64,000 nucleotides of DNA from Stylophora pistillata (Eukaryota), in contig NW_019218252.1 of NCBI RefSeq assembly GCF_002571385.2, forward strand, positions 167,244 through 231,243. Reading direction: 5' to 3'. Each line of letters begins with the position of its first letter. The stretch's first letter is position 1. The translations under genes were made by a program, and so were the position numbers. Shown piece by piece: positions 2,851 through 35,498 of this stretch. The notes beneath the pieces are model-generated. The model did not search any database, was not told the origin of the DNA, and was given only the letters and a program-made list of their open reading frames with translations.

Positions 2851-5093
<2,243 letters not shown>

Positions 5094-8000: not shown

Positions 8001-8262
8001 TTGTGGTGCGCATGCCAACCAGGAAGCGCGTTTTTTTGCGAGTAACCAACTCCGTTTTAGGTTTAAATCTGATTGGTTGAGAGGTTGAAAGGGGGATTCT
8101 AGACCAATCAGCAAGCGAGGTAAAGCAAGCTTACGATATTCCAGATTATTTTTTTCACTGAATTAAACAGCATTGTGAACAAAGGATTCCTCTCTGTTCG
8201 CGCACATTTTTTTTGCACCATGATTGGCTAGCTGTTTAAACAAATAACAGCCGCGCCTTGTG

Positions 8263-14200: not shown

Positions 14201-17200
14201 GAGGAACCAGATTGCTCCGATGGTTTTTTTCCTCTTTTTGACTTGCTTGGCAAGGGTAATATCCTTTTCTTTGAATTCTTTCGTTCTGGTTTGACGGGGT
14301 GTGGTAGAGGGTTGGTGTTATGAGTAGGTTGTACATCTCCAAGTGGCGATGGAACCGACTCATCAGATTTGACAGACCAGCTAGATGACCTGTTGACTGG
14401 ACAACGAGGTGGTGGAGGGGCAGGAGGAAGGCTTGACATGTCATCATCTACGTCATCCAGCGGCTGAATAGGCACGTCACTAAATGCATCTGGTATGCCA
14501 AATATGGAAGTATGTCCATGGGAAGGGGATGATGATCCAGATTCTACCATAAGATTCGAGCTTTCAATATTTGGTGAATGACTTGGCGATTCCCGATCAA
14601 ACCGACAAGAATGAAGTGGCGACGAAGAAGTCGAGGAATCTGTGTCCAGACTGATAAATTGTCTTCTTGGTTTAGGTGGCGGCGGAGCACTCGGTAAGCT
14701 TGGGAGACTTTCTAGCTCGTCATCAAACAAACTTGGCGGCTTGATTGGACTTTTATCCAGTCCATTCCACGGCAGAGACTCCAAAGCAGCTGCATCTTCC
14801 ACACACGAATAGTTCATGGCCTTTAAGGGTACTTCTTGATGTATGCTTTCATCTTTTACATTGTCTCCAAACAATCTAGGGGGTTTAATTGGTGGTATCT
14901 GTTGTTTTAAGTTCTCAGGAAGTCGTTTCTGCTTCTCTTGTGAAGCATATTGTATATCGGACTTTTGCTTTAAGTTCTCCTTCTTCTGAATTTTTTTTGA
15001 AGAGGGTGACTGTGCGTCTTCACTGAACAGACGCGGAGGCTGTGGTGCTAATGTGCTTACTTCCTCTACTTCTGGGTCGAAAGATAACGCAGATTCAATA
15101 CTTTCATCAACAAAGTCTTCGAAATTGGCTGGTGGGCTCAAAGGTACGTTATCTCCAATGTCTTCCGCTTTTTTTTCAGGCACTTCACCAGAATAACTTT
15201 CTTCATCTGTGTCATTTCTCGGCAATGGTGGAGGAGGAGCAGAAGGAGGCAGACCATCAAATTCAGTTTCTTCCAGTTCACTGTCTTCGCATCCCTCTGT
15301 TGTAATTAAGTCATCAGTAAGTTCTTGAGACAGAGTTATAGAGGTAACACTTTCTTCTGAATCTGGTATAATGTTTGATGAAAGTAAGTTTGAAACTGTT
15401 CCACCAGAAGTTTCTGCTGTTTTCAGAGAGATAAGCTCATTGGGGATGTCCACCCAAGGTGTTTGGGCTGCCACACTAGGAAAAACACTCGGTTGAGCTT
15501 CCCGGTCTGCTGGGCTGATTAGGTCAGGTATCTCTTCAAGTTGTCCCTTTTTCTTCTGAAATGAGACTGTTTCGTCAAGGTATTCGGTCGGCTTCGGTGG
15601 TTTAGGTCCGGCTTGGGCCACAATTCTTACATCTCCCCTTGGGCAGTTCTTGACCATATTTTGGACATCTTTAAGGGCCATTCCTTCTAGGGAGGAGTCG
15701 TTAATCGACAAAAGAACATCTCCAACCCTGAAATGCAGAGGACACAGGATGCTTTCGTTACTTACACGCGCTGGTATATAATAGAAAGCAGGGGTGAATT
15801 TCGGAAAAATCTTGGTTTTTTTTTATCCTAAAGCTTCCTATTTCAACCTAGAGCATGAACAAACCATTTTCACCTATTTTTTTCAAGTAAAGGGATTTAC
15901 CTTAATTCGCTTAATTAGGCAGAAAAAAAAAAGCATTTTTTTAAAAAATGCGCCACGTGAAACAAAACAAGTAATGATAAATAGTGATTTCATCCATTTC
16001 TTCGGTTTCGCATTATTCATACCTGATATTCCCATCTTTTCCCACTAAGCCAATTTTTTTAACATCTGACACAATGACCTTCCTCTCCCTTGTTAGGTCC
16101 ACTTTAAAGCCAAGGTTTCTAAACTTTCTCTGATAGGTAATAGCAAATGGAACATTCTCTACTCTTCTACCTTTTTTTGGTTTCACGTCAACGCCTATTT
16201 TGTGTTCAGTTGTATTTGGTGTTGTGATGTTCTTTGTGTGGTGACCTTTAACCGAGGATGGAGGACCTTTACAAACTCCAAATTCAGGTTTTGCTGAAAA
16301 TATTTCTAAATCCAGGTCTTGTAGACGCTTCTCGTAGCCACTTCCCTCTTTTTTTGATCCCGTGCTCGTCTCCAATAATTTCTCTGAATGAGTGTCCTTT
16401 GTTTTCATTTTTTTCGATGGCAAACCGGGTTTGCAATTGCCTGACAACGAAGTTGCCTCCGCGCTAGTTGTTCGTTCAGATGTAAACTCATCATCCTTTT
16501 CGTCTGAATTCAAATCGTTGCAAGCATCAAGCAAAGACTGAAAATCCCAACTCGTACCTGTTCCTTTGCCAGGAGAACAAGCTTTTTTTTTGCTAGAACT
16601 AGATTCCGGTGAGATCTCGTTGACTTCAATGGACTTGATTCTGTTGCTTTCATGATGATCAGTTCTGAAAGGGTCTTGCTCAAGGAATTCCTTCATTCTT
16701 GGACTAAGGTCGGGCGGTGGAGAAACAACGGGAATGGGTGATAAAGACAAGTCATAGTCAATTTTTTTTGGAACTGGTGAAGGAGGGGGAGAAAATGATG
16801 GAGGAGCTACAGACAGATCGCTTTCTAAAAAATCGTCTACATCCAGTAATGGTGGGGGCGGAGGTGAAGATGGCAGTTCTGGAACATCCTCTTCAACGTT
16901 TACATCTTCATCACTTCCTAAATAAGAGTCATCACTTCTACCTAATTTTTCCGATTCCCTGCTTTGCTGAGACGCGCCAAGAGATACAGCTTTTTCCGCA
17001 CACGGCAACGTTTTTGCCTCTTCTCCCTTTAACGACGATGATGGCTCACCGTGGACTCCGCATTCTTGAACGACAGTAGTATCTTGACCAGATGATAAAT
17101 CAGACTTGGATTCACTTTTTTTACTTGATATTTTCTCCTGACGATCTACTCCTTCCCGTAAAATCACAAACGTGACAACTTCTGTTGGTTTCTTGAGCAA

Positions 17201-20200
17201 CTGCAATGCCATCGAGTGAGTGACACCCTTCAAGGATGCGCCATTAACTGACACAAGTTTATCGCCAGTTTGAAGTTGTCCATCTTGAGCACACACCATA
17301 CCAGACTGTAGTCTGCGAATCTGTAAAAAGGTCAAAACACCTTAAATACCGATCAGTTAATTCACGGGGGATACACTCATCTGACTGGGAGGTTAGCTAT
17401 TTTCGGGATACTCTTCGCACTCGATTCCTTTCAACCACTACATTTTTATAGCTTCAAAAACTCGAATTCGAAGCTAATAGCTAATAAAATCATGCCCATT
17501 TGGTGCTTTTTTTAAGTCATGGACACACTTTTTTTATGGGGCAGGATCCACGGAGAAAAGCGATTCTACTAAAGGCTTAAAACATCAATTAAGCTGCTGA
17601 GTTTTTCTGATTGAACATGGGCAGTGAGAGTAAGAAGCATAATAAGTGCCACCTGTCTTCCCAATTCAAACTGAATCATGTACACTGATTCCAGTTCCAT
17701 TGCTATTACCTGGAAGTATCCCTTAAGGTTCCCATAGCTTGGGACCAAAGAAAGACCAAGCGTGGAGTTAGCTCCCTTCTTAATGCTTATTTCCATTTTC
17801 CTGTAGCCAAATGGAATCATCAAATTGTCCCCCAATTCGTCCTTAACTTTCTCCGAATTCTTATTTGTTGAGTGTTTGTCTGTGCTTATGACATCTGTGA
17901 CTGGTTTAATCTGTTCTTTAAATCGTGATTTTGATGCACTTCGCAATTCTTCTTCATTCTTTGTGCTCCTCTCTTGTTCGTCAGTGTTCCGTGGAACTAT
18001 AATTCCATTATGGTCTTTTTTCTCTGCAACATATTCTGTACGTGGAGCATCACTTTCTTTTTTTTTTTTGACACACTCGGAGGATGGCACCTCATCTGTT
18101 TTGTCAGATGACAGGAACCTCTCTTCCTGTGTACCAGGTTTTACCTTTCCCCTAAGACTCGACCTTCGCTTACTCCCCGGAGGTTTGGGAAGGGGCGTAG
18201 GGTGTTGTGGGACAGATTTCTTTGCTGGCTCAGTTTTCTTGTTTGCTCTTTGAGTAGAGTCCAATCCCTGGGAAGTCAACTTAGACCTTCTAATTTTTTT
18301 TTGCGTTGAACTTGGCAGATCTCTGAAGATCTTGATCACATCTTCTTGGTCCATTCCTCTGAGGTGGGTGCCATTGACTGCGATAATTTGATCTCCTGGT
18401 TAAAAAGAAATTTTTTTTTTCAGAAAACTCGTTTACTTATGCTCGAAATGTCATCTTTAGGTACTTTTTACATTTTTTTAATGAGATCATCAAATCAGTA
18501 GATAAAATCAAATTACTTCTAAAATCTGTTTCGGATTATCGTACATGTCTTCATCTAAAAGTTAAGTTGGACACATCCATTAAAGTTCACCTTAATCTGT
18601 GTTCAAGTCCTCTATACAAGGGACACATCCTACCGAAAGTAGTAGCCTTTTTTTTTTAATTTTACATACCAAAGAATCTTCACTTATCGTAACAGCCACA
18701 GAATTTCATGCTGGGAAGTTGAATGAAGATAGTTCTCTAAGTGTGTTATGGAAGTCATTAATAAAAATTTTTTTCTCACCGAGTTTTAGCCCCACTCCCC
18801 TTGGACTTCTTGCCAAAGCAGCAGATCCTCCTTCAGTTATACTTTTAACTGACACACCCTCAGCTATGGTGTTCCCACGAGACTTGTCGACTGTGACACC
18901 CATTCCCAGTCCAACTACCAAGAAAAAAAACGCAGCGGTGAGCTTTTTTTTTAATCCGCGGAGTTTTCGATGAGGCTTTCTATTTAAAAGTCTATCTTAT
19001 GGTTTTTTTTACCGGATGGTTGCTTTATAATTGTGTAGATGTCTTCCAGAAATTCGGCAGAATTTTTTTTAGTAAAGAATAAGCAAAACATGGTCAGAAA
19101 AAAGTTCTTATACTCAACAATTAAAAAATTAATCCTTTACAACTGGTCTTACGACCTATGTGGTTGGCAGTAGTTTTGTTTTTTTCGATCACACTTGGCA
19201 CTCAAATTGAGTATCCCTTCTTTCTCTTTTTTGACCTTTTTTTTCACATGCTGCTAGTCTTATCACAAAAAGATATCAACCTCAAATGTGACATCTTTGT
19301 TTCAACACGTCGTTGCCTCAGTCGTTTCCTTTTTTGAGATGAATACTTCAGGTTTCTTCAAAATAGGTCTTACCAGGTTCATAAGTGAAAACATCATCAT
19401 CTGACTCTTGAACTTTTTTTTACTAAAAGAAAAATGAAACAGAAGTATTAAACTGAAAAGCTATGTTTCAATAATAAATTTTCACATTCATTTCAGGCTT
19501 TGTATTGTTATGTATTGTGAATTATTTCTGTCCCTGAAAACTAAAAAGTCACTCGTAAGACAAACTTCATAATGACCAATTAGGGACAACTTTTTTTTCT
19601 AGACCAATTAGGGACAACTGATCATCATATTTACCTTCTTTTTCTTTTTTTTTTTTTTGGAGAGTGGAATGAGGAGATCACAAGAAGAAGAAAGACTTGT
19701 CAAATTGTCTTTTTTTTATTAAAAAAAGAAAAAGGAAATTAAGGCCTGCGGATAACCTTGACATGACATTTTTTTGCACGGCGATCAGTTACAGATGTTT
19801 TCATCCACAAAGAGTACCATCTTCTGATTTTTTTCCCCTGCATATTTGTGAGTAGTGGCAAGACTCCAACAGTTACTCAAAAGTGTAGTACCTTGGATAA
19901 CCTTTAAAAGTAGACATTCTACAGAGGTTAGATCGCAGTATTTTGTTTTTTTTAGTCCTTCAGGCAATTTGCTTGTTTACCCTTTGAGTTCTCACTGGCT
20001 CTTTTTTTTTTTTCTTTCTTTTTGAGTTGTGATTGGCTTGGTTTTACTTTATTGACACTCAGATTTTTTTCAGGCTATTGTACATTTGGAGCTAACAGTT
20101 GATCAAGGCTTATTAAATTGCCTTTTTTTCCATCATCTACCTTTAAACCTCTACACTCTATCAGGGCTCAACATTAACTTTTTTTTTTACTAGTTAAATG

Positions 20201-23200
20201 GCTAATAGTGCGACAACTTAGATGTTACAACAATTTCAATTTTTTTTCTGGTCAAAGTAGCTGGTGGAAATAAAAAACCACTAGTTAAAACTGAATTTCT
20301 TTTTTTCTGTGGCTAGTTGGCTACTGGTAGTGTCAAACCCTGCTCTATTATAAGTATGTTTTTTTTATTCTTTATACTGTTCTCTTTGCATGTTTTAATG
20401 TCCTGACAGGGTAAACATGTTTTACAGTAAAGAGCTGCTTAATAGTTGATGATCATTTCCTATATTCTCCTGACCTTTTTTTTTGATTCAGGGGTGACAT
20501 TGTCAGGAGAAATTAGATGCTAGTCACTCTTGGCATTTTTTTGTTAAAACCACTCACCACAAGACTCAGAGCTTTCTGATGCACCAGAGAGTGTTGATGC
20601 AGTTCCCGAATTCTTTGATTTCCCTGACATCTTTTTATCCAGTAATTGACGCTCACTTTGAAGCTTAGTGAGTTCATCATTAAGTTGTAGGGGTAACTTG
20701 TCAGATGCATTGTTTTTTTCAACTTTAATATATACTTTTCCTGGAGGAGTTTTATCTAGAATGTTGTAGATGTTTTCAACTGACAGTCCTTCCAGTTTCT
20801 TGTCATTAATTTCAAGGAGTTGATCACCTTTTTTTTTAATAAAACAAAACAAAACAAAACAAAAAAGAAGAAAAATTGAGAAAACCTTTTTTTTTTGAGC
20901 ATCAAAATTTATTGCATGTCAACATCGTAAGGATATTGTTAATGAAGGTTTTTTTTTACTCTTTTCTCCGCAGTTTAGCTTGCCATAGGCAAAAAACAGT
21001 AACCAGCAAAGGTGAACATTTATTTCATTTCAAGACAAGTATTTAATAATTTTGTTTGATTAAAGTAGCTGGCACTTTACATAAAAAGTAGCTTGTGAAA
21101 ATACCAGCCAGTTTGCCTTCTGGAGTTTTTTTTGGTTATGATAAACAGCAAAATCAAATTTGAAAATGAAAGTGCTGTGTCTGTTTTTTTTCTGTGGCTG
21201 AATAAATGAGTAGGAAGGTTTTACACGTCAGTAAGTTCAAAATTTTTTTTATGCTGTTAAACTGTTTGCATGGTAAGATCCCAAAAACCTAGAAAAAAAA
21301 AATTTTTTTAAAGGAATCTGATGGTTTATGTAACCATTCACTTTCATTGAAGTGTTTGCTTTTTTTTTCTTTCAATCCTATTCTTTACTTTCATCACTTG
21401 TCTGCTTGATGTTGTAAGGAGAAATTCTTTCTTGGTCATTCATGGGAGTTAAAGGGCTTAAGATGACGTTAAGTGTAAGATGTTGAAAATGAAAGGCTGA
21501 CAGCAAATTTTGTTGTCTATTTATGTTGTGCTTTTGTCAGTGGAGGGTGCAATAAAAAAATATAATTCACCTTAATCTCCCATCATTGTCTGCTGGTGTT
21601 CCTTGAATAACACACTGAACAAAGATTCCAGGTAGCTGATTTGATGGATGTTGCTCTCCTAGACCAATTCCTAAGCTGCTCCCAGGTTCTAAAAGCATGA
21701 ACAAATTAATTTTTTTTTTTTTGAGCAAGACCCTAGATAATTTTTTCACAAGCCTTTAAACAACTATATGAACCTTTTTTTATGGGCAATAAACAAGTTA
21801 CATGTATTGGCCACTGGTTCAAAGTAGTATGGCTACTGTTTGGCTGATAATATTAGGGTGAAACAAGTTTACTTCAAGAATCAAAAATAGAACACAGGGA
21901 AATCTCTTCAAAAACTGAATAAAAAATAGCTCAGACCATCACAATTTACCCTTTTTTTCTCTAGTCCTGGTTGCCTAATGATAACACTCTTTCTGTCACA
22001 TTCTGGTGATTTTTTTTATTGAAAGTACTTTCTGAGCTTACATTTAACCCTTAACAGGGCTCGATACTAACTCTTCAACTTACTAGCCAAGTGGCAAGTG
22101 ACATCTTAGATGTTACGACAATTTCAATTTTTTTTCTAGCCAAACTGACAAGTGGAAATCAAAAACCACCAGCCAAAACTGAATTACTGCTGGTCTGTGG
22201 CTAGTGGGCTACCATTAGCATTGAACCCTGCTTAAACTCCCAAGATTTTTTTTTTAATTCTCCGCTCTGACTGCTATACATTTCCTTGTAAAGTAGTCAC
22301 AAGAATTTGGTGTCAGATCAAGATTTATAACAACTTCTACCTGATAAGTTTGAGCACTCTCATTACTTGTTTGGTGGATGATGTATTGATTTTATGGGGA
22401 GAATTTACATGTTAGTCACTTATTTTTTTTTAATGGTTAACTCAGTCATTATATACATTAGACAATGCCTTGACCTTGTTCTTTTTTTTTTTTATTACAA
22501 TAAACTGAGAAAAAAAATTCTATAAATTACCCCTTTGAAGGTTTTTTTTTCCTTCTGAATTATTTCTTTAACAAGAAATATATGAACTAATCATTAGTGC
22601 AAGATTTGAGACAGGGACATAAACGTTTGTTCTTTCATAACTATTTATAATATTTTGATGCAGAAAACCATCCATGCCTTACCTATATAATTACTCATTT
22701 AACTCTTGACACTGATTATTTTGACTAAAATCCTTTAGAGAAATTATCAAACATGAAATCAAACTTAAAAGTGCTTATTTTTTTGACTAGTTCTTAATTT
22801 TTTTTTTTTTAAAAAATCATCATTAATTAAAGGTCTTTTTTTTTGCTCCTGTTGAAAGTGTTGGTGAAATAAAATACAATAACAAATATTTTATGTTTTT
22901 TTAACTAATCTCCTGAAAAATTTTAAATTTACTAGAACTAAAGGATATGCAAACTTTTTTTCAAATTCAAAACAAACCTTTATAAAGAACTATTTCATTG
23001 ATTTTCTCTTTCTTTTTTTTTTTCGGACGCAGCTTTCGAAACATTATTGGAGAAGACGAATTGCTGGAGCTGGTTGAGTCCGCTGTCACACCTCTGCTGT
23101 TCCGACGCAAACTTCCTGGTGAATTTCTGGGTGTTGTAAATGTTGATAAACTTGGAGCTCCAGGACTGTTTCTGTGCACTTTCAAAGTTACAATTCCTCT

Positions 23201-26200
23201 GCGAAGATTCTACAACCCAAGGATAGTATTTACTACAGCAAAGAATATTGTATAAGTTTCACCTGGTGAGTAAACTTCAGCAATGGATAGCACAATAGAT
23301 TGATAAGCTTTTTTTAGGAACTACTTTATTCTCCTACAATTTGATTATGAACTGCCGACTGAAAGTCAAAATAAAGGTGCAAAAAAATGTATATTTTGCC
23401 ATAAATTCTCAACAATTAAGATTTTGAACTGCGACCCTGTATGAATTGATAAAGTTTTCCTCTGTTTTCAATCTGTGTCAGCAATAATACTCTTTTGTTT
23501 ACTTTGATAAATCACTTGATCAATAACCTGGGGCAGGTGAATGTTGTACTTGTTTAATATTTAATCATAAATAGAAGTGATTGAAAGCCCACAGCCAGAA
23601 AGATTTTTTTTGTAGTTGAATATAAAGAAAATGTGATTTGTCAAATATTTTAGCAGTGCTCAAAACCCCAGATCTCCACAATTACTTTGTTAAAGTTTCT
23701 ATTTTAATTAGAGAGGCAGTTTCACACATTACCCATTATAGCAATGTTTTCAATTAAGCCATGGAGAATTTGTTTTTTCCCCCAGGAACAAACAAATGAC
23801 TTCATTTTGTTGACATTGGGAACAATAGCCAGCAATTTTTTTTTTTATTTATCCCCAAACACAAGAAAAAGAATATCAAATCAAATTCATCATTTCATCA
23901 GTAAGTGATTATCATAATAATCTGAGTTTCTCTGACATGTAAATAGGGTTGACTTGGTTTTTTTAATCAACATCAAGTTTTTGGATTCTCCACTTCTTTC
24001 CATCAACGTTTTAAGTTTTTTTTTTCTTAGAGAAAAAATAACCTCTTTCAATACTTATTCTTGACTAGCCAGAAAAAATTGCCAAAAATGGCTTTTGTTA
24101 ATAGTTTGGATGACTAATTAAGCAAATGATAAACTTAAACTAAAATTTCAGTAATTGAAAAATTTGATTAAAACTAAGTTAAATTCATTTGGATTTTTTT
24201 AACTCAATAAAGTCTTCTTCAGAAACTCATAAAAATGTTTGAAAGTTAAAGATTTTTTTATAACATTTGTGGATAACAAAAACAAAACTCTTAAGACAGT
24301 ATTTTGTTTATTGAATGTTAAGAAAGAATTCTCCAAATTTTCCCAAAGTCAGATGAATCATCTCTCTTTAACAGAACCATCCAATTCAAACTTTTAGATC
24401 AATGATTAACCTGAACACATAAAAAAAATTTTTTTTACAATTCTTTGTGAGATTCATGAACATGACAGTGAGAACTGCCTGCACTACTTACCTTTTGCTG
24501 TTGCTATTAATAATTACTAGATATAGAAAACAATTAATGATTATTTTTTTTTTATACAATTTATTAAGATCAATATAAAATCTGTCTGACTTATATTTTG
24601 AGTATTCACTCAACTCAAGCTGAAAGCAGTCACAATGAAACATACCAATCAATATATTCAAAAAATGAGTTTATGAATAGCCCATTTCCAAATTACCCTT
24701 GGCCTCTTTTTCAAAACGAGGCCTGGTGCTTAACCATTCTTGTAAAAATGAGTTTAATTTGCATGTGAATGGAAACTTCTAATTTTTTTAATGGATGAGC
24801 ACCAGGACTCGTTTTGAAAATGATGCCAAGGGTAATTCGGATTTTTTTTATTTGAATGCAATTTCCTAAGGGATTCCACTACTACGAACTATATATCAAT
24901 TTTTTTTATTGTTTATGAAACCTTTTTCATATGTGTAGCTCTAAAAAAGTTACCTAACATTTTTTTCTTGTAAATATGTTGATATCGCAAGGAGAAAAAT
25001 TCCATTTTGGTTGCTACTTTTTTTTAAAAAAATTCACCTCTTTTCACCTTCAAAAGTTCTCAACTCTGACCATTATTCATCCTTTACCTTAAAGGTGTCC
25101 AAGGCTTTCTGATGAGTGAAACCTTCAAAAGATGTTCCATTCACTGATAATACCTCATCACCTACAATTTGATTGCAAAGAACAAAGAAGATGAATTTGG
25201 AGGGCAGACTAGTGTAAACAAATTTAGAAATTTAACATTAAATCGACCTTCACATTTTTTTTGGCAAGAATTAAAAAAATTACTTTAACATCTAATATCC
25301 TTCATTTGCACTTTTTTTTTAAATAACAAGTAACCTTTTCTCATTCTTCCATCTGCTTCTGCTGCTCCACCATTTTTTTTATTCCCTATGTATACAGGCA
25401 TGTCGCCCTGAGGTGAGCCTTTTCCTCCAACAATAGTAAACCCGAGACCTTTTCCACTCATTCCCTTTACCAGAACAATGGTAACAATTTCCTCTTCCAT
25501 TGCTTTACTGATTCTTCTTTGTGTGCTGTCGTTGCTTCCCTTTCTCTTTTTTTTTTGCGAGTCCCGTTCATTACTCCCCACAAGATTTTGGGGTGTTGGC
25601 AAAGCTTTAGTCATTATGTTGGCGGGGGGATCCCCCAGATATCGTGCAGAAAAAGCGATTCCCATACCTCCTGGAGACTGAGGTCTTGGCAGGGAAGGTG
25701 AGATTTGACCAGGTTCTAGACTCATTTCACTTTTTGTAGGTTTCTCTTTAGGGGGTGAATTATTCAAGAAAAGGTTTGGTGAGTTTCTCTTCTTTGAAGC
25801 ATCTATAATTGGTGGGGATGGGGATGGTAGCTTTCCTGGTGAAGATTTTTTGGAAGACCCTTTGGAAAGTGGTTTATCCTCCAAAGTAACAGGTTCACTT
25901 TCTAAACTTTCTTCTCCTTTTGAAAGTAAGACATCTTTTGTGTTTGACTTTCCTAGTTCATTGGAACCATCAGATGAGGAGGAGCAGCTTCTGCCATTAG
26001 TCAACTTTTGTTCATTTCCATTTTTTTTGACATAATTTCCTTCATGATGTGACTTATCTTGCGAGTCTGTTGCATCAATTTGATTAATATTCTTTCCTGA
26101 ATTCAATTCTTCAGCTCTTTGCAAAAGATCATTTTCCATTGATTGTTGTAAAAGATTCTCAAATGACTTTGTGGTCCCTTTTCCAAAATTTTTATCAGCT

Positions 26201-29200
26201 GCTTTGTTCTCCTTTTCAATATGATCAGAGGACATTTTTCTACCTTTCTTCATCAAACTCTCTGCAGACTGCGCTCGAGGAAGGGTTTTTGAAATCTGTG
26301 TTCCAGTTCTTCCTGCTTTTTTTTCCAAAGACCTTTTTTTAAACCTTGATGCTGTCACCTTTTCCAACACAGACTGGCTTACCTTTGTGAAAAAAATAAA
26401 ACAAATAAAACTTCCATACTTGTGATTAAGATTTTTTTTTTTTAGATTGTAGTATAAAGTACTGACAGCAAAATACTTAATAATATAGAGTCTATCTGCC
26501 AAGGAATTATTCATGAGAAAACTGTTTGTTACCTGTGTTGAAATGACCAGTTGTATAAGCCTTGGTGATGCTCTAAGTAAGTCAACTGCCTCCTGTTGTG
26601 TGACGCCTATCAAGCTGTGGCCATTGATCCATAACAGCTCATCACCCTCCTTAAGGCGACCATCCCTAAATTTTTTTAAAGAAAACAAAATTTCAATTTA
26701 AAGTTAATTTGTTATAAGTAATAGTTATTGAAAGTTACCGATAAACATTTACTTGGATATATGTAGGTAAAATGAAATTCCAGTTTTCTCCCTTTAAGAA
26801 TTGTTAGTAATTAATAATGTGGGTGGAAATACTGGTATAAAAAACATGCAAACTTAACTAGTTACAAATATTTTTGACCCAAATTCATTTTAAGCTGGAA
26901 GATAATGCATATATCAAAAAGTGCATTTAGATTCATAGTATAGCAATAATATATAGTTTTAACAGTTTGTATGACCCAAATGCATCCCAGGCAGCTATAA
27001 TTCATTTAATAAATTTAATCCAAATTTTTTTCTTAACATCTATTTCAATCTACTGTTCAACTAAAATTATATTAATTTTTTTACTAAAAGAATCAATGCA
27101 TAAATTACAAATAATGGAAGGTTTATTCTTTAGGGTTAAATCTTTTTTTATCAGCATGGTTAGTAATTTTATCTTAAAACAGGATATTGGGTTATTTGCG
27201 CTTTTTTTTATTTTTGTAGAAAAAGCGCAAAATAAGTATTAAATATCATTATTATTATAATTTTTTTTCAATATTGAATTTGTTTTTAGATATTGAGTTT
27301 TGTGTCTTGGCTGTCATTGATTTTTTATGTCACAGTCACAATTTGAAATAATTTGCACCTGTAGAATTCCATCACTGTTACTTTATCTATACTGACTGTG
27401 TAACACTGATTTTCTAATATGCACAAAAAGTCTTGAATTTAAACTTGAACCAAGACAAGGTCAGGATTGTATACTTAGGAATTAACTCTTTGAATAATGA
27501 ATCTATTTGTAAGTAGTTGCTGCAACCAAATTTAAAAATCTGTATTCCTGTGAATGTATCATACCTTGTGAGTCTTTCTTCAATGTTTTACACAACAAGC
27601 TCAAATTGTGGTACTTAATTTTGATATTACAATGTCAATTGAAGGTTTCTCATGAAAAAAAATTATGATTTTTTTTTTTTTGATGTAGTAGTAACAGAAA
27701 CTCTACCTCTTCAGTTTCACATGTCATTATTGATTGTGAATTATTAAAAAAGCTGTATATGGTTCATTGAGTGAAAGAATATATTTGAACATTTGACCTG
27801 GCATAACTGTAAAACAATGCTGTTACATTAATCAATACATGTGAAATACCGCACCTTGCAGCAGCCCCACCAGGGCTCACATCAGACACAAACACACCCT
27901 TCTCTCCTGTTTCATGGTTGAGTTTCATTGATATTTGTACTCCAAGTCCACGGCTATCCTTTAAAATATGTATCTTCTTCACTCTGTTTTTCTGTGATGA
28001 AATATCAGGTGGACAATTCTCAAAATATGCAAAGCATCAAAACAATATATTTAATTACATGAAAATAAAATTTTAAAGTTCATTGTTTTTATTATTTCCT
28101 ATCATTTTCTAACATGACACTATAGTCAATAAAAAATAGTTTTAAGTCTGTTGACGTATCTAATTTTCATTAATTTTATTAAGGTCATTTAATATCTTTG
28201 TACACAGTGTAGGCCATACCTTAGGTAGCAAGACATGTCTGTTTTTACATCATAAATTATGCATTTTTTTAACTTATTCATGAAAGGATTTCCTATCATT
28301 TACTACGGTGCTGTTGCATCTGTTATTGCTTAGAATTTCATTTATTTTCCCACATAAGCACCAGTTACAAACTGAGTGTATTGATAAGTTACAATGAGTA
28401 AAAGTTGAATTCTGTGAATATAGTAGGGCTACACTTGGTCTCCAATATGCACGTCCACAACTGATCAGCCAATCTTCAAATTTTCTTTATATAAAATACT
28501 AAGACCATATTTACAAAATATTTCTCCCCAAAGAGACATTAGTCTGTTGCAAGTTCCATTAGTTCCAGCATTCAGTCACGATAAGTAATAACATAGGCTG
28601 GGATACTTATTACTAACAGTACATGTTTGAAGCTAGCCCTTTTTCAGTAAATGCACGGTTTGAAAACAGGAGTAAAAGTTGATGGTGTAGTCTGCTCACC
28701 CATGAGATTAGACTAGAGATCAAAGGGCTCCACTACTGTAGGTAATGAGGTCAAAATATCAGTCACTGTTGCCCACAACAGTCCTTCTACGGACTTCTCA
28801 ACGGGGATGACCAGACTACTTGTTCAATAAGTTATCACTTCTGTCAGATTTACAGTTGGGAAACTTATGAAATTGCAAGAACATATCACAAACATCTGAT
28901 TAAAATAATTAAAATTCTCTACTAGAAATGGCCTATAACATTTTCATCAATCTGTCAATTACAGGTGATAAATGGTTATTTATTTTAACACTATATCTGC
29001 AAAAGAATGTGAAATTTTTTAGAGTAAAAATTTTTTTATTTTAATCCTGTTAAAATTGACTTTTGCATTTCAAAGTGCAATCTTAGATATTTTTTTTTTT
29101 TAACCAAACCATGACAATAATGGAAAGAAAATACTCTTCTACCCTACTTTTTTTTGGGCCAGACGTGTAAAAGTCAAATTAAAAATTTGTTTGATTAAAC

Positions 29201-30505
29201 TTACAGATTTTTTTTTCTCAGAAGTGTTTTCATGTCTTGGAATAACACCATTCTTCACAGGTGTGATGTTGCTCCCACCAGGACCACGGAGAACTTTTAT
29301 TTTTAATTTTCCACTCCTCAAGGCACTCCCTAAGTACCATCTAAAACAAATCACTCCAATTAATATTAATTCGCGTTTACACATTAAATATCAGTTCATC
29401 TCAAAACCAAGACGTTATAAAATATTGTTTGTGAATAGCAAATGAAATACGTAACAATTGAGATTAAAAAATATATAATTTAATTCTGGCAATACTATTT
29501 CGGCGAGTTCTCTTCTGAAAATAAGTGTTTCATGCTAGAATTTGGATAGAAATTTGATATTATTAATTAATCGCCCTCTTTGTAGTCTAATTCTTATCAG
29601 GCGTCGAACGCAAATATTAATGCTGAGACAAGAATGTCGAGTACAAAAAACCTCACACAGCTGTGCATGCACAGGTAGCGATATTAAACGTAAACAAAAG
29701 GTCACACACAATGTGAGCCAATACAACTCAAATAAATGGCGCTAAAACGATCCCTATTTCAAAACAACAGACAAACATCCTCTACACCACCAGTGGTACA
29801 AATCTTCCAGCGTTTAAGTTCAATGAATAAATGATTTAGTGCCGAACAGTTCACAAGATTGCACTCAGATATAGCGTTAAGGTCCTAAATCGTTCGTTTC
29901 AGATTATAATAGTACACTCAAGGGAGAAATGGTTGTAGATGATACAACAGTTTTGTAAAGAAGCTTGACTATGATTTTTTTAATTCATTTATTCTTCGCC
30001 ATACAAAAATAGTACCTGTTGCGGTTTTTTAATAAACTTTGATGAAGCCTACGAGTTTTACCTTGCTCGCTCCAGGCTTGCTTTGGATAAATCGCGGCCA
30101 TTTATTTCCATTACTCTATCTCCAACTTCCAACAATCCATCCCGTTTTGCTTTTTTTTCCGGCAATAAATCGGCGATTCGAATATTTCCCAAGGCACTTC
30201 TTGCACAGCTTGGGCTGCTAGGATCTTTGTTTTCGAGCACGACTCCAAAATCTCCTGAGCACTCATCAAATTCGAACGATTTAGTGTCGCCTTCTCCATC
30301 CACGTCTCCGTTTCGAAGCGTATCTTCGGCCGCGGAAACCTTCTTTGATCGCGGAGAAAAAGCATCTGAAGAAGAAATCTTACCTTCTTTTTTTGTATTC
30401 AGTGTTAAACCACTAGTAAAATGGTCCTTGATGTTTTTCTGTAGTAGACATTCCTCCAATTTTTCCCGTCTTCGCAACCGAATCACAATAGGTTTGAGCT
30501 CGTTT
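8263..30505 (-). CDS. Giant multi-PDZ scaffold (~10 PDZ domains), PDZD2/pro-IL16-like. Approximate exons 30062-~30505, 29205-29340, 27855-27991, 26533-26666, 25334-26382, 25088-25161, ~22992-23210, 21571-~21690, 20558-20828, ~19374-19422, ~18780-18920, 17710-18397, 16023-17320, 10852-15727, 9712-~10475, 8263-8976.
   Basis: Repeated PDZ motifs (GLGFTIVGG, GLGLSVTGG, DGRLKEGDELLWING, GDKLVSVNG). The C-terminal PDZ (LEKGASGLGFSLGGGQDSLYGDAPI...LPYGPVVMKIRRK) closely resembles the IL16/PDZD2 C-terminal PDZ. Long Pro/Ser/acidic linkers. 5' end and small exons uncertain. Confidence 0.8.
24676..24852. mobile_element. Palindromic MITE (~177 bp)
   Basis: Left arm aatagcccatttccaaattacccttggc...ttttcaaaacgaggcctggtgct mirrors right arm agcaccaggactcgttttgaaaa...gccaagggtaattcgga[T7]tatt. 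Confidence 0.75.
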
Positions 30506-31344
30506 TTTTTTTATCTAGGTCACTAAACTTTTCATCTTTAAAATTCACACCAGAAATTCTCTGATTTTTTTCATGCTTTAAGGCGAAATGTTTTCTTTCC
30601 AACCGTAAGGATTCAACGTTTCTTTTTTTTTCCTTTGTTTCTGTTTGTACTGTCTTTTCTAAGTTAAATACAGTTGAATTACTTTTTTTTGACGTCATGC
30701 CCACGTACCACTCATCCCTTATGAAAATGTCTTTCTGTTTATATTGGCATGTTTCAGTTTTCTGTTTAAAGGATACAACATTATTCTTCCAAGCAATCCG
30801 AGCTTTCAACCTTTGGAAATTATCACTCTACAGCAGATATCGCAAAATGAAACATTCCTTTTTTTTTTGATCGAACTCATGCAAAAATGCGAACCCTACG
30901 GGGGCAGGGAAGAATATGGACCCCTTGAGGAGGGTCTGTGTCGTCTGGGTCAAGTCTGGCCTCTCGTGAGATACACGTTTTTTTAGATCACGTTTGACCT
31001 TTCAAAGTAATTTTCAAGTACCTTTTTTTCGTAAAATTTTTTTTTACAAATTGAAAAGGAGCCCGATTACATCCTTCACAGCCGTTTCCAATCTCTTTTT
31101 TTGTCGCACTCTCTCTGCGTGGAAACAAAACAAAAGCGGTGGTAGCAAGAAAAGAAAAAACGCGCGAGTGAGCGAACTAATGACCTCTGTCTTTCCCTCG
31201 CGCGTGCTTCACTTTTTTTTAGTCAAGTGCCGACTACTCCTGGTAAAGGAACTACGACGGTACCTTGAGACCTTTTTTTATATGTTTTTGCCAACACCTT
31301 AGGGCACAAACATTTCTGGTACGCTAAACAACACAACCCTGACC

Positions 31345-31731
31345 TAAGGCCCTGTTTACAAGCAAGGAGGGTAACCCTTGTGCTAGAGTTTTTTTTTCAG
31401 GAGGGTCAAAGATAGCCCGGGTTTACAAGCAAAATTTCACAGGCAGGGTTACCCTACCACCCGGGACAACGTACCTATTTATGGTAACCGCACGCATTGT
31501 TATCAATGTTTTTTTGGTCTGGAAACAAGTAAAAAGTTGTCCAGGGTAGGCGAGTTATCCCCAGCAGTTTTTTTACAAGGCAGCTAGGGTAACCCTAGTG
31601 CTAGGGTAACCCTAGCTGCCTTGTAATTTTTTTGATGAAAAAAAGAAGAAATGTGGGAGCGTTAGGGTAACCCTCCTGCCAGGGTTTTTTTTGCACTAGG
31701 GTTACCCTACCTGCTTGTAAACAGGGCCTAA
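31345..31731. mobile_element. MITE with 17-bp TIRs and TAA flanks (PIF/Harbinger-like), with internal GGGTAACCC palindromic subrepeats
   Basis: taa|ggccctgtttacaagca ... tgcttgtaaacagggcc|taa, plus many gggtaaccc/gggttaccc units. Confidence 0.8.
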
Positions 31732-32604
31732 GACGTCAGCGAATTTTTTTTGAAGTCCAAGTGCAGTATTGACTAAGTAACCTAAACGAACTGACCAATG
31801 AAGAGCGCAAGTTCAAATACAGTGGTAGTGCGCTGGTGTGGGGTATCACAAGATAATTTGGTTTTTTTTACTGAGTTCATCATGTGAATTTGCCATCATT
31901 TCGTCAGAGCGAAATTACGAAGGGCTCACGCTTGAAATGTCGGCTTTAGAGACCCTTTACGGCGTCCAATTCAAATTATCTTTTTTTAACTGCAAATTTA
32001 AGACTAAATCGAACCCACCTGTAACGCTGGTGAACTGCTTTTTTTTGATTAAGGATATTGGCGGATAAACCAATTACGCTAGGGAGCTGACCAAGGGAGT
32101 TAGTGAACTGACATGAAACGTCAGTAAACAGACTTGCGACTTTGGCGAACTAGCCCATTTTTTTGGCGAACTGACCCCAAACTAAACAGAAATGGAAGCG
32201 AACTATAAGCGAAACTGTCAGAAAACTGGATACATGTAGAGTCGGTGTAAAGGATAGTAAGTTGTCTTCGGATACAGGCGAGAAAAAAAGTGGTCCCGAA
32301 AACAAGAGGAAGTGTGCATAAAACTTGGACTGATAACTAATCAAGAATAGAGAACTCGGCAGAGGCTTCGTTGTTTCGGTAAAAGGACTTTTACACTTTC
32401 CGTTTGCTGTCTCTCTCTTCAAAGAGTGGCTAGATCCAAGAAACAATTAAAAGCCTGTAGACTTAGGCCCTGGTGAAATCAAAACAAGATATGAAAGGAT
32501 CTCAAATCCATCTTGATGAATGATTGACTAGCCAGAAAGAAGAGACATCAAGGACACGCATTTTTCTGGTTGAAATTTTATTTTACAGCTCTCAAAACAG
32601 GGCT

Positions 32605-34948
32605 TTACTCCCTAGATTTCATCTTTTCACGTGCCATCTTCTTCTTGGACACCTTTTTAACCTCGACCTCATCCTCGCCACGAGGAACCACTTGCTCGCG
32701 TTCAGCTAGGATCATCTCTATGTGGCATGGGGAGCTCATGTAGGCTGTTTTTTTCAAGGTTAGACTAGTTTAAGTTTTACAAGCATATCACTTCCATAGC
32801 TTATCTTTTTTTTTTCCATCAGTGACCAAGACAGAATTTCTCGTTACAATATCACTACAATGTCGAGCACACAAGTGATGAAAATAATGAATGAATTAAA
32901 CGTGAATTAGGAGATTGATAGTTGTTTTTTTTCCAAATTCTCCCCCCCCAAAAAAAAACATTCTAAGAGCTGTATGGCAGACAGTAAGGAGAATTTTTAT
33001 TGAGATCTTGGGAGTGAAACAAATAGGAGCTTACTACTCCAATTTTTTTGGATACATAAATATTAGTTACTAGATGAGAGATCCATGGGTAGAAATTGTG
33101 CCTGAGATTTTGGGCAAGGCCTGAGAAATGTCAATTACTGTCATCACAAACAATCCTAAGAAGACAATCCTTAACTACAGTATCACAAAGATGCTGAAGC
33201 AATCAAACCTTTTGCTGAAGTGACATTCTGAAGACTTGAGAAATATTGCCTGCCTATACCCTCCCCATTGCTTAAATGTTTTTTTAGAAACAAAGTGACT
33301 TACGATTGATACGTCCATGGGCTCTGTAGGTTCTCCTCCTCATCTTGGGAGCAGCATTGACTTGAATGTGCTCAACCACCAACGAGTCCACATCCATTTT
33401 TTTGATACAGAAACAAACACAGAGGACAATGAGGGAAGACTGTGCAGGGCTAAATTTTTTTTATACTGGTAGAATCACTCATGTAATCATAGAGATTTAG
33501 GGTTCCAAATTTCCATCATCTGGTTGCTAAGGCAATTGAAAAGGAACTTGGCCGCCACCAGAATTCCTGGCCATTTTTTTCAAGTCCTGTTGATGTTCAT
33601 CATGTAAGCCAGTAGTCAAGAAATTAAATATTTTTTTTTTTTCTTATGTGCTTTTATATACTCAGCTGGTGATTGTTCACCAAAAGGAATGTTTTTTTCA
33701 AAGAAACAACCAACAAAACTTTGTGTTTTTCTATTTCACAGTGAGGCATCCAATAACCAAAAAACTCACTTTAAATTCAGCATTGCTCTCAGCATTTTTG
33801 AGGAGCTGATTTTTTTTCTCTGCACTTTTCTTTGGCCAGCGGCCCTGGGATCCTGGAGCATTGAAGTTTTTTTTTTGGAAATGTAAATAATGTAAGTTTA
33901 TTTTCTCAATCATTACCTCTCCCAAGATTTTTTTAGTAATTCTCCTTTAAAACTAGCATACGTTTTTTTTTTTTCTTGTAAGTTAGTTTTTTTTTGCTGA
34001 TAAGTTTTTTGATTCCCAATACCAGTTCACAAGATAAGGTAGCTATTTTTTTAGGAGAAGTTACACTCTAATCAAGTCATGAAGTGTTACGTATAGAGAA
34101 AGTCTGGTGTGCTAGGATTATATAGAGGGAAATATCAGTCTCCTTTCTATTAAGCAGTTCTACACTGAAATTTGGGACTCTATATGATAAATAGGGCAGC
34201 AGACCTGATGGGAAAGGCTCCATTTTTTTAGTCACTGCAAATTAAACACTAGCATATAGCAGATTGAGAAATAACTTCTTATTTTTTTAGTTTCCAACTA
34301 TTAATTTACAGAAGACAAAGCCAATAGAGAGGATCATGCATGACATTGGTAGCTTTGGTTGATATGTCAGTTATTACTTCTACCAATAGTATACTGATAT
34401 TTTTTTATATCAAGACACAAGTTGACTATTGATCATCAGCCAATCAATGGACAACTATGGACCAGCCGTTGTTTTTGAAAAGTGACTGGCTTTCAGCAGA
34501 TATATTGCCCACCCATCCACCAACTATCGGCTGAAACATATCAGCCGAGGCCACCCATAGTAAGCTTGGCGGCTAATTTTTTTCTTCATGGTGGCGTTAA
34601 GGTACTTGGGAGAGCATTTTAAGAATCGTGGACTTTGGAAGTTCTTCAGTAAAGCCAAGTTATTTCAAACACATCGTACACGTAAATGACAAGTTTTTTT
34701 TTATTATGGGAGACATGGTATACATATCATACCTGAGCTTTACGTCCCACGCCACCATTGAATCTTCGGAAGGGAATGATCTGCTTCTTGGCAATAACAT
34801 CCTTGAGATATCTGTTTGCCTTACGTATGTGCATACCCTTGATGGCCACAGCCGTCTCGTGTGTGTTCTTGTTTTTTTCACGGAGGTTAGAGCCTCGTGC
34901 TTTACAAGACTTGGTTGGATTCTCCGGATCTTTTTTTTAACGAGTCAT
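32605..34948 (-). CDS. RPL17: 60S ribosomal protein L17 (uL22). Exons ~34732-34948, ~33766-33872, ~33304-33401, 32605-32744. Disrupted as written by T7 tracts.
   Basis: [42 protein letters not shown]...GGVGRKAQ; [22 protein letters not shown]; [37 protein letters not shown]. Confidence 0.93.
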
Positions 34949-35336
34949 CTTGAGTGACCTTTACCTGCAAACACATCGTGCATCGACATAATGGTTTTAA
35001 GTCTATCATATTATGCAAGGAAATCAAAGGGAAATTATATACATAGCTTTTTTTTTTTCACTCGGATACCACACAGTCCTTCAGACAAAACGAAATAATC
35101 TTCGAAAAATGCTAGGAATACTTAGACATGTTTCCCAAAGTTAGCAAATAATTTATTGTGGAGTAATAGATTCACTATCAGCGCGATTTTTTTACATTTA
35201 AAGTAATACTTCATTTATGTTATTGGGCAGAAGTACGCACTGATGTTGAAACTACAAACATCGGAAGTCTACCGAAAATTGAAATTTTTTTTGGGGAGAT
35301 AATTTGAGATTTTAACAACATATTGAAGTCAATCTC

Positions 35337-35498
35337 ACCTTCGAAGAGGAAGGTTGAAAGAGGACATCTACCCAGACTTCTTTTCGATATGACTAGCTCA
35401 CTACGCAAGCGCATTCATCAATTCAAAATGGCGTCTGATTCGTATCGCTAGTTGCAAGAACTTTTTTTGGTTTCCCTGGCCCTGTCTTGTAGTTCACG
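35337..35498. promoter_or_regulatory. Compact bidirectional promoter shared by RPL17 and the NPL-FKBP gene, including the RPL17 pyrimidine-rich (5'TOP-like) first non-coding exon
   Basis: Minus strand cctttcaaccttcctcttcgaag|GTGAGA at ~35337-35362. YY1-like AAAATGGCG at ~35425-35433. FKBP ATG at 35499. Confidence 0.6.

What the first reader, a model, noticed from the sequence alone, without database searches (positions are those of the whole stretch)
24842..24848. Internal control 1: T7 replaces exactly 7 nt of a MITE terminal inverted repeat
The left TIR aatagcccatttccaaattacc predicts a right TIR ggtaatt(t/c)gga-AATGGGC-tatt. The sequence reads ggtaattcgga-TTTTTTT-tatt at a lattice site. 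This is a length-neutral replacement of a mostly non-T heptamer, which excludes polymerase slippage or homopolymer expansion.
Basis: seen in the sequence. Interest (0 to 1): 0.75.

Follow-up and report, generated by a model that had tools for sequence, protein, structure and literature searches.

The report
Assembly artefact: periodic T7 overwrite
The seven Ts are not coral DNA but one site of a computer-made, 59-base-spaced pattern of T blocks that overwrote real bases in this public genome assembly and has already leaked into public protein records.

Summary
Observation confirmed. Window 24842-24848 reads T7 where the mirror arm of the same 177-nt MITE, and 29 of 29 other aligned genomic copies, carry AATGGGC or a one-change variant, with no length change. 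Genome-wide, the normal 22-nt end occurs 298 times and the T7 version once.

The block is one site of an exact 59-nt lattice (window 362-38595) in which 249 of 649 sites are T7. It runs through exons, introns and repeats.

Contigs from two independent sequencing studies, and raw reads from two further runs, show ordinary non-T letters and no indels at neighbouring lattice blocks. The rows for this exact block were not displayed.

The lattice is in the deposited assembly. PFX17490.1, XP_022803379.1 and UniRef100_A0A2B4RLW4 all hold one identical protein sequence that carries F residues exactly at three lattice blocks, where all 12 compared relatives have D-C-I, D-M and I.

Other zones of the same genome have their own period (54-61), block length (7 or 26) and letter. 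An earlier scan note (s1-786338) reported a 61-nt A7 overwrite on another piece of this genome.

Verdict: a computational overwrite, not a biological feature. The root cause in the pipeline is unknown. Biological interest is low. It matters for data quality.

The parts
24842..24848 (.). The T7 block of the finding. It overwrites the heptamer AATGGGC of the right terminal inverted repeat.
24783..24789 (.). The neighbouring lattice block, 59 nt upstream and inside the same MITE. It overwrites TCATATG of the family consensus.
   Evidence: 21 of 29 copies have TCATATG, none has T7.
24676..24852 (+). A 177-nt MITE copy with long inverted arms, from a high-copy family of this genome.
   Evidence: 819 candidates, 40 scored; copies 91-93% identical; 52-nt arms, 88%.
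362..38595 (.). The lattice zone. T7 blocks sit on an exact 59-nt stride and 249 of 649 sites are filled. The phase slips by -1, -1, -2, -1 near 2368, 9211, 19181 and 24548.
   Evidence: The rest of the 249-kb contig has no lattice. The zone begins just after a 1473-N run that ends at the window start.
3134..3140 (.). A lattice block inside an exon of the Golgi phosphoprotein 3 gene. It yields FFF where relatives have DCI.
4786..4792 (.). A lattice block inside the last exon of the same gene. It yields FL where relatives have DM.
5081..5087 (.). A lattice block at the end of the same coding sequence. It yields F where relatives have I.
2851..5090 (+). The Golgi phosphoprotein 3 gene. The tblastn matches are 2851-3036, 3110-3367 and 4662-5090, but the last two overlap in protein residues 143-147 and the window departs from the protein from about 3357, so the second exon ends near there. 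Its public protein record carries the artefact residues.

Best explanation
The T7 at 24842-24848 is not part of the coral's genome. Some computational step in producing the deposited assembly wrote blocks of one letter over the true bases at a fixed stride. In this zone the stride is 59 nt, the block is 7 nt and the letter is T. The zone starts at or near the first base of a gap-bounded contig and runs for about 38.6 kb. The write replaced bases one for one, so lengths and reading frames are kept, and it ignored what lay underneath (exon, intron or transposon). One block landed on the last-but-four bases of a MITE terminal repeat.

Shown: the replacement, the lattice, its absence from reads at neighbouring blocks, and its presence in the public record.

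Inferred: only 38% of sites are filled either because a later read-based correction step repaired the rest or because the write was conditional. The few 1-2 nt phase slips suggest the lattice was laid in an earlier coordinate version of the contig, before a last indel edit or haplotype choice. Which program did this is unknown.
For: Lattice:
- Exact 59-nt spacing with 249 of 649 sites filled. Chance expectation is about 9.6 on-phase runs.
- Only 13 off-lattice T>=7 runs lie in the zone. Outside it there are 19 T and 17 A runs in 25.3 kb.

Length-neutral overwrite of known sequence:
- Two blocks in one MITE differ from 29 of 29 family copies with no gaps. Genome-wide counts are 298 normal ends against 1 T7 end.

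Reads:
- Contigs of runs X1 and X13 (two studies) read non-T letters at lattice blocks 22424, 22542, 22778, 22837, 22896, 22955, 23309 and 23604. Raw reads of X20 and X21 agree at most of these. That is 8 of the 10 filled blocks in the displayed range.
- No indels were reported at the blocks.
- In X1, T>A/C/G changes number 160, against about 75 changes of all other kinds.
- Contig pieces align without gaps (X1 record 7: 24826-27022, 63 other letters, 0 gaps).
- The best runs hold only 0.64-0.69 of the 31-mers, as expected if words spanning the blocks are missing.

Public record:
- The protein held as PFX17490.1, XP_022803379.1 and UniRef100_A0A2B4RLW4 sits on a contig of the same length, 249,087.
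- It has F residues exactly at blocks 3134, 4786 and 5081, where 12 of 12 compared relatives have DCI, DM and I.

Same signature elsewhere:
- A26 blocks at period 59 on C19, starting 15 nt after an N run.
- Clean T7 lattices at periods 54-61 on many contigs and both strands.
- A C7/G7 lattice on C896.
Against: - The rows for 24842-24848 itself were not among the 40 of 524 difference rows that read laying displayed.
- The two contig pieces that cover the block start only 16 nt to its left, short of the tool's own 31-nt bridging rule. Direct read evidence therefore exists for neighbouring blocks only.
- At block 22778 only one differing letter is displayed. X20's reads (0 of 4) do not show it, so some overwritten heptamers may have been T-rich already.
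- Two filled blocks in the displayed range (22483, 23014) have no rows and lie in T12 and T11 runs.
- Logan contigs drop rare variants, and X1 is only presumed to be the source sample.
- No simple software model explains zone-specific periods, letters and block lengths, the partial and GC-dependent filling (52% at flank GC below 0.30, 27% above 0.50), and the irregular slips.
Confidence: 0.93

Rival explanations
1. The T7 blocks were already in some of the reads used for assembly, for example a faulty library or cycle range, and the assembler took them over. The error would then be of sequencing, not of software.
For: Not every library of the project could be inspected. Only contigs of X1 and X13 and a fifth of the raw reads of X20 and X21 were laid. 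Filling falls with GC, as read coverage effects do.
Against: A read-level fault cannot place blocks on an exact genomic stride for 38 kb or 17.6 kb (C743). Zone-specific periods and block lengths do not fit a cycle fault. The runs that best hold the stretch lack the blocks.
Confidence: 0.04
2. The T7 is real DNA of the sequenced colony: a biological, site-directed replacement, or an individual-specific variant of this MITE copy.
For: The exact site is not visible in the displayed read rows.
Against: At 8 neighbouring blocks, reads and contigs from up to four runs read other letters. No known process replaces 7 nt with T7 every 59 nt through exons, introns and transposons alike. The lattice would give a deeply conserved protein FFF/FL/F where 12 of 12 relatives agree on other residues.
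Confidence: 0.01
3. The right end of this MITE copy simply decayed, or belongs to a subfamily with a T-rich end, and its place on the lattice is a coincidence.
For: MITE ends do decay. 6 of 29 copies have one change in the heptamer.
Against: 0 of 29 copies, and 1 of 299 genome-wide ends, have T7. A second block 59 nt away in the same copy shows the same replacement. Six of seven letters change at once with no indel.
Confidence: 0.01
4. The lattice was put in by this scan's own data handling and is not in the public record.
For: The window and G000 come from the same held copy, so their agreement (L001) proves nothing.
Against: The exact protein sequence with the three artefact sites is held by NCBI (GenBank and RefSeq) and UniRef.
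Confidence: 0.01

Closest known systems
Coordinate-driven data artefacts in assemblies (hard-masking, gap filler, column or stride overwrites in sequence files)
   Same: Placement follows coordinates and not biology. Replacement is one for one, it is absent from reads, and it is confined to blocks of the file or contig.
   Different: The filler is a valid base letter and not N, so it passes as sequence and is translated. Only part of the sites are filled. Each zone has its own period (54-61), block length (7 or 26) and letter. The lattice here has four small phase slips. I found no description of such an artefact (literature: listings and abstract openings only, plus passages of PMC5730576).
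Earlier scan note s1-786338 (61-nt periodic A7 overwrite on another piece of this genome, read as a file-format artefact)
   Same: Same genome, same 7-nt homopolymer block, and the same conclusion that it mimics mutation. My one search finds T7/A7 triples at period 61 on several contigs.
   Different: The period is 59 here. The range of periods (54-61) and the slips argue against a plain fixed-line-width explanation.
Homopolymer length errors and polymerase or replication slippage
   Same: The result is a homopolymer run.
   Different: Slippage lengthens or shortens an existing run. Here a non-T heptamer is replaced at constant length.
MITEs (short non-autonomous TIR transposons)
   Same: The host element is an ordinary MITE: 177 nt, long inverted arms and hundreds of copies at 91-93% identity.
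   Different: Nothing about the element itself is unusual. Its target-site duplication could not be resolved, so I did not assign a superfamily.

Membership tests
Computational overwrite artefact (not in the organism's DNA) | Absent from independent reads and contigs of the organism | tested here: met
   non-T letters at 8 of the 10 filled blocks in the displayed range (22424-23604), in X1 and X13 contigs and mostly in X20 and X21 raw reads. Rows for 24842-24848 itself were not displayed.
Computational overwrite artefact (not in the organism's DNA) | Placement set by a coordinate stride, blind to sequence class | tested here: met
   (59-nt lattice, 249 of 649 sites). The blocks fall in exons, in a MITE and in non-coding DNA.
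Computational overwrite artefact (not in the organism's DNA) | One-for-one replacement (no length change) | tested here: met
   (no gaps against 29 copies). (contig pieces with 0 gaps, no indel rows at blocks).
Computational overwrite artefact (not in the organism's DNA) | Same signature elsewhere in the same assembly | tested here: met
Computational overwrite artefact (not in the organism's DNA) | The responsible program or step is identified | not testable with these tools
   Only the published pipeline description was read (passages).
Fixed-line-width (60-column) file-format overwrite | One period tied to the line width throughout the file | tested here: not met
   Clean lattices at 54, 55, 56, 57, 58, 59, 60 and 61 nt.
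Fixed-line-width (60-column) file-format overwrite | Perfectly regular in final coordinates, or slipping at a regular interval | tested here: not met
   Irregular slips of -1, -1, -2, -1 over 38 kb.
Homopolymer slippage or expansion | A pre-existing run of the same base, and a length change | tested here: not met
   The native heptamers are AATGGGC and TCATATG, and there is no length change.
MITE | Terminal inverted repeats | tested here: met
   (52-nt arms, 88%). The family copies extend the symmetry to the ends.
MITE | Short, and high copy number | tested here: met
   177 nt. 819 candidates in the first look. 298 exact terminal 22-mers.
MITE | Target-site duplication of fixed length | tested here: inconclusive
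   no flanking direct repeat of 2-9 nt in at least half of the rows at the boundaries tried. The left boundary in that script was one base off, and I did not repeat it.

The most novel reading that the evidence does not exclude
The lattices come from a fault in a widely used assembly, scaffolding or gap-filling program, not from a one-off file accident. Other public genomes built with the same tools would then carry the same hidden valid-letter overwrites and the same corrupted protein records. The phase slips suggest the lattice predates a last sequence edit. Zones starting at contig starts point to a per-contig processing step.
Probability: 0.2. Interest if true: 0.5.

Novelty: not a real feature. 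Interest (0 to 1): 0.2.

Why it matters
Biologically it does not matter: the T7 is not coral DNA. It matters for data quality. The overwrite uses valid letters and keeps length and frame, so it passes validation. It gets translated (FF on one strand, KK on the other) and looks like substitutions, decayed transposon ends or pseudogenes.

At least one protein held in GenBank, RefSeq and UniProt carries three such sites. The same window holds a giant PDZ-domain gene crossed by many blocks. Clean lattices were seen on more than 30 contigs.

Analyses of selection, repeat ageing, variant calling and primer or guide design on this reference will be misled inside these zones. The MITE test is a simple internal control that other scans can reuse.

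Tried and rejected
Two-bit packing idea: T would be binary 11 and block lengths of 7 and 27 would both be 3 mod 4 of a 59-base record. I rejected this because the C19 blocks are 26 long and a C/G lattice exists.

Byte-stride idea: a fixed byte stride in a 60-column FASTA would give a period of 59 with a regular +1 slip about every 61 sites. I rejected this because the slips here are -1, -1, -2, -1 at irregular spacing and the periods range from 54 to 61.

Hidden second structure or message in the filled/empty pattern: autocorrelation is 0.17 or less and there is no secondary period. I did not pursue it further.

Filling set by the overwritten letters: the native heptamers seen in reads are not T-rich, so this is unlikely. 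Filling does fall with flank GC.

Locus-specific native sequence from metagenome contigs: 0 hits.

Literature: four searches showed no report of such an artefact. I saw listings and abstract openings only. Of PMC5730576 I read the passages on assembly. Supplements are closed and may hold assembly details.

Scan of 286 kb of other fetched loci: a lattice appeared only in the C19 piece that was chosen for it. The zones are therefore a small part of the genome.

The target-site duplication of the MITE was not resolved.

Full report
**The observation**

The window reads GGTAATTCGGA, then seven Ts at 24842-24848, then TATT. The visible run is eight Ts because the first T of the native TATT follows the block.

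The left end of the same element (24676-24697) is AATAGCCCATTTCCAAATTACC, so the mirror image predicts AATGGGC at 24842-24848. The inverted-repeat finder pairs 24687-24738 with 24790-24841 (52 nt, 88%) and stops exactly at the block.

**The lattice**

- The window holds 281 runs of T>=7, against 42 of A, 2 of C and 0 of G.
- From 362 to 38589 the T runs are spaced by 59 nt or exact multiples of it.
- Walking the lattice gives 649 sites in that span, and 249 of them are T7.
- The phase slips by -1, -1, -2 and -1 near 2368, 9211, 19181 and 24548.
- Of 262 T>=7 runs in the zone, 249 are on the lattice. About 9.6 would be expected on one phase by chance. Thirteen runs are off the lattice.
- The 25.3 kb beyond the zone has 19 T and 17 A runs.
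- The site 24842 is on the lattice, and so is 24783, which lies inside the same element.
- The remaining 185 kb of the 249-kb contig shows no lattice.
- The zone begins just after a 1473-N run that ends at the window's first base. It stops about 38.6 kb in, with no N at that end.
- Filling is weakly clustered (lag-1 autocorrelation 0.17). It falls with flank GC, from 52% of sites at GC 0.25-0.30 to 27% above 0.50.

The element is a 177-nt MITE with hundreds of copies (819 candidates in the first look, 40 scored, 91-93% identical). Every match to other copies ends at query base 172, which is window 24841, the last base before the block.

I aligned 29 other copies (L002-L030):

| Position | Window | The 29 other copies |
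|---|---|---|
| 24842-24848 | T7 | 23 AATGGGC, 6 one-change variants, 0 T7 |
| 24783-24789 | T7 | 21 TCATATG, 8 variants differing from it by one to three letters, 0 T7 |

The window row has no gap inside the element. Genome-wide, the 22-nt end with AATGGGC occurs 298 times and the T7 version once, in this window. Two successive lattice sites therefore each replace seven known, mostly non-T letters at constant length.

**Reads**

The best holders of window 22000-27999 hold only 0.64-0.69 of its sampled 31-mers. That is what is expected if the words spanning the blocks do not exist in reads.

I laid two sets of run contigs (X1, possibly the source sample, and X13, another study) and two sets of raw reads (X20, X21) on the same 6 kb, with likeness set to 80. 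Only 40 of 524 difference rows were displayed, covering 22424-23714.

- Ten filled lattice blocks lie in that range. At eight of them (22424, 22542, 22778, 22837, 22896, 22955, 23309, 23604) the contigs read non-T letters.
- The few raw reads mostly agree: 4 of 4 and 3 of 3 reads at 23605, and 2 of 2 at 22955.
- The other two blocks (22483, 23014) have no rows and lie in T12 and T11 runs.
- At 22778 only one differing letter is shown, and X20's reads (0 of 4) do not share it.
- No indel is reported at any block.
- In X1, T>A, T>C and T>G places number 79, 34 and 47. All other kinds together come to about 75.
- Long contig pieces lie without gaps. X1 record 7 covers 24826-27022 with 63 other letters. 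X13 record 16 covers 24826-27230 with 79 other letters.

The rows for 24842-24848 were not displayed. Those two pieces begin only 16 nt left of the block, which is short of the tool's 31-nt bridging rule. Direct read evidence is therefore for the neighbouring blocks, not for this one.

**The public record**

The last exon of a Golgi phosphoprotein 3 gene lies in the zone. Its best database match, P0001, is 285 aa, is named for Stylophora pistillata, and sits on a contig of 249,087 bases, the length of this contig.

That exact sequence is held as PFX17490.1, XP_022803379.1 and UniRef100_A0A2B4RLW4. Its exons map to 2851-3036, 3110-3367 and 4662-5090 as tblastn matches. The last two matches overlap in protein residues 143-147, and the window departs from the protein from about 3357, so the second exon ends near there.

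P0001 departs from relatives exactly at lattice blocks 3134, 4786 and 5081:

| Lattice block | P0001 residues | P0001 | 12 of 12 compared relatives |
|---|---|---|---|
| 3134 | 70-72 | FFF | DCI |
| 4786 | 185-186 | FL | DM |
| 5081 | 284 | F | I |

. The lattice is therefore in the deposited assembly, not in this scan's copy alone, and it has been translated into public protein records.

**Elsewhere in the genome**

- Four T7-or-longer blocks at 59-nt spacing match 3826 times forward and 6860 times reverse. This count is inflated by long blocks.
- On C19 a zone starts 15 nt after an N run. It has A26 blocks at period 59 and about 85% filling.
- Triples of exact T7 (flanked by non-T) occur 26, 32 and 34 times at periods 59, 60 and 61.
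- At periods 54-58 they occur 100 times. The hit positions are exact multiples of one period within a contig, for example C743 at 54 nt over 17.6 kb, C229 at 55 nt over 6.5 kb, C391 at 56 nt and C53 at 57 nt. C547, with an 18-nt step, looks like a natural repeat.
- At 62-66 nt, the hits on C12 (multiples of 31) and C56 (multiples of 16) may be natural satellites.
- A C7/G7 lattice at multiples of 59 is on C896.
- In 286 kb of other loci I had fetched, only the C19 piece chosen for it shows a lattice.

**How it most likely arose**

Shown:
- The replacement is one for one and stride-placed.
- It is blind to sequence class.
- It is absent from reads at neighbouring blocks.
- It is present in the deposited record.
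- It recurs in many zones with zone-specific parameters.

Inferred:
- It is a computational overwrite made during production of the assembly.
- The three zone starts I could see lie less than one period from a contig start. This suggests a per-contig processing step.
- The only slip interval covered by reads (24253-24783) contains the only X1 contig indel in unique sequence, an extra T after 24391 (table 4). The lattice may therefore be exact in an earlier coordinate version, or in the other haplotype, and the slip may come from a later edit. This rests on one case, with a chance of roughly 0.1.
- Partial filling could be partial repair by a read-based correction step, which would work better in GC-richer, unique sequence and worse for 26-nt blocks. 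This is a guess.

The species' genome paper describes ALLPATHS-LG with HAPLOIDIFY, L_RNA_scaffolder, and three rounds of SSPACE and GapFiller (PMC5730576, passages read). I cannot say which step, if any, is responsible.

**Comparison, novelty and verdict**

The host element is an ordinary MITE, and the T7 is not a feature of it. The closest known kind is a coordinate-driven data artefact. It is unusual in that the filler is a valid base, filling is partial, and period, length and letter differ between zones. A plain 60-column file explanation fails on the range of periods and on the slips.

I found no published report (listings and abstract openings only). Supplements are closed.

As biology the finding scores low: it is not a real feature. 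As a data-quality matter it deserves a note to the database curators and users of this reference.

Noticed in passing
window 8263-31000, minus strand: A very large multi-exon gene with PDZ-like segments, with ORFs at 8263-8976, 9520-10479, 10825-15711 (1628 aa), 16013-17335, 17569-18354, 25285-26688 and 30058-30486. Many lattice blocks cross it, and on this strand they read as A7, which adds KK-type residues. Its public protein model is probably corrupted in the same way as the Golgi phosphoprotein 3 model.
   Followed up: no
G000:C19:1083785-1090000 (L050 3785-10000): A second lattice zone with A26 blocks at period 59 and about 85% of sites filled. It starts 15 nt after an N run, so nearly half of the sequence there is filler.
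   Followed up: partly
G000 contigs C743, C870, C205, C229, C391, C3892, C53, C87, C396, C1127, C70, C1405, C8, C303 and others: T7 lattices with other exact periods (54-61 nt) on both strands. C896 holds a C7/G7 lattice at multiples of 59 as well as a T7 lattice at 61.
   Followed up: partly
G000:C12:1099769-1102350 and G000:C56:446504-461584: T7 triples spaced by multiples of 31 nt (C12) and 16 nt (C56). These could be natural satellites or further lattice zones, and I did not read the sequence.
   Followed up: no
window 24391-24395: Run X1's contig has one more T than the assembly after 24391, while X13, X20 and X21 agree with the assembly. The site lies in the one lattice slip interval that was covered by reads (table 4).
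   Followed up: partly
window 22055-22421: A very high-copy repeat. Raw-read depth is about 1000-1800 per strand, against about 1-5 in the unique flanks. Many joints and loose ends sit at 22055, 22212-22218, 22327 and 22421.
   Followed up: no
G000:C468:128546-128600: An odd cluster of ten short N runs (1-12 N) within 55 nt, unlike the usual single N or long gaps.
   Followed up: no
window 31389-31692: Another first-stage note (s1-776300) says successive lattice sites overwrite subrepeats of a second MITE. My lattice walk shows filled sites at 31391, 31509, 31568, 31627 and 31686.
   Followed up: no
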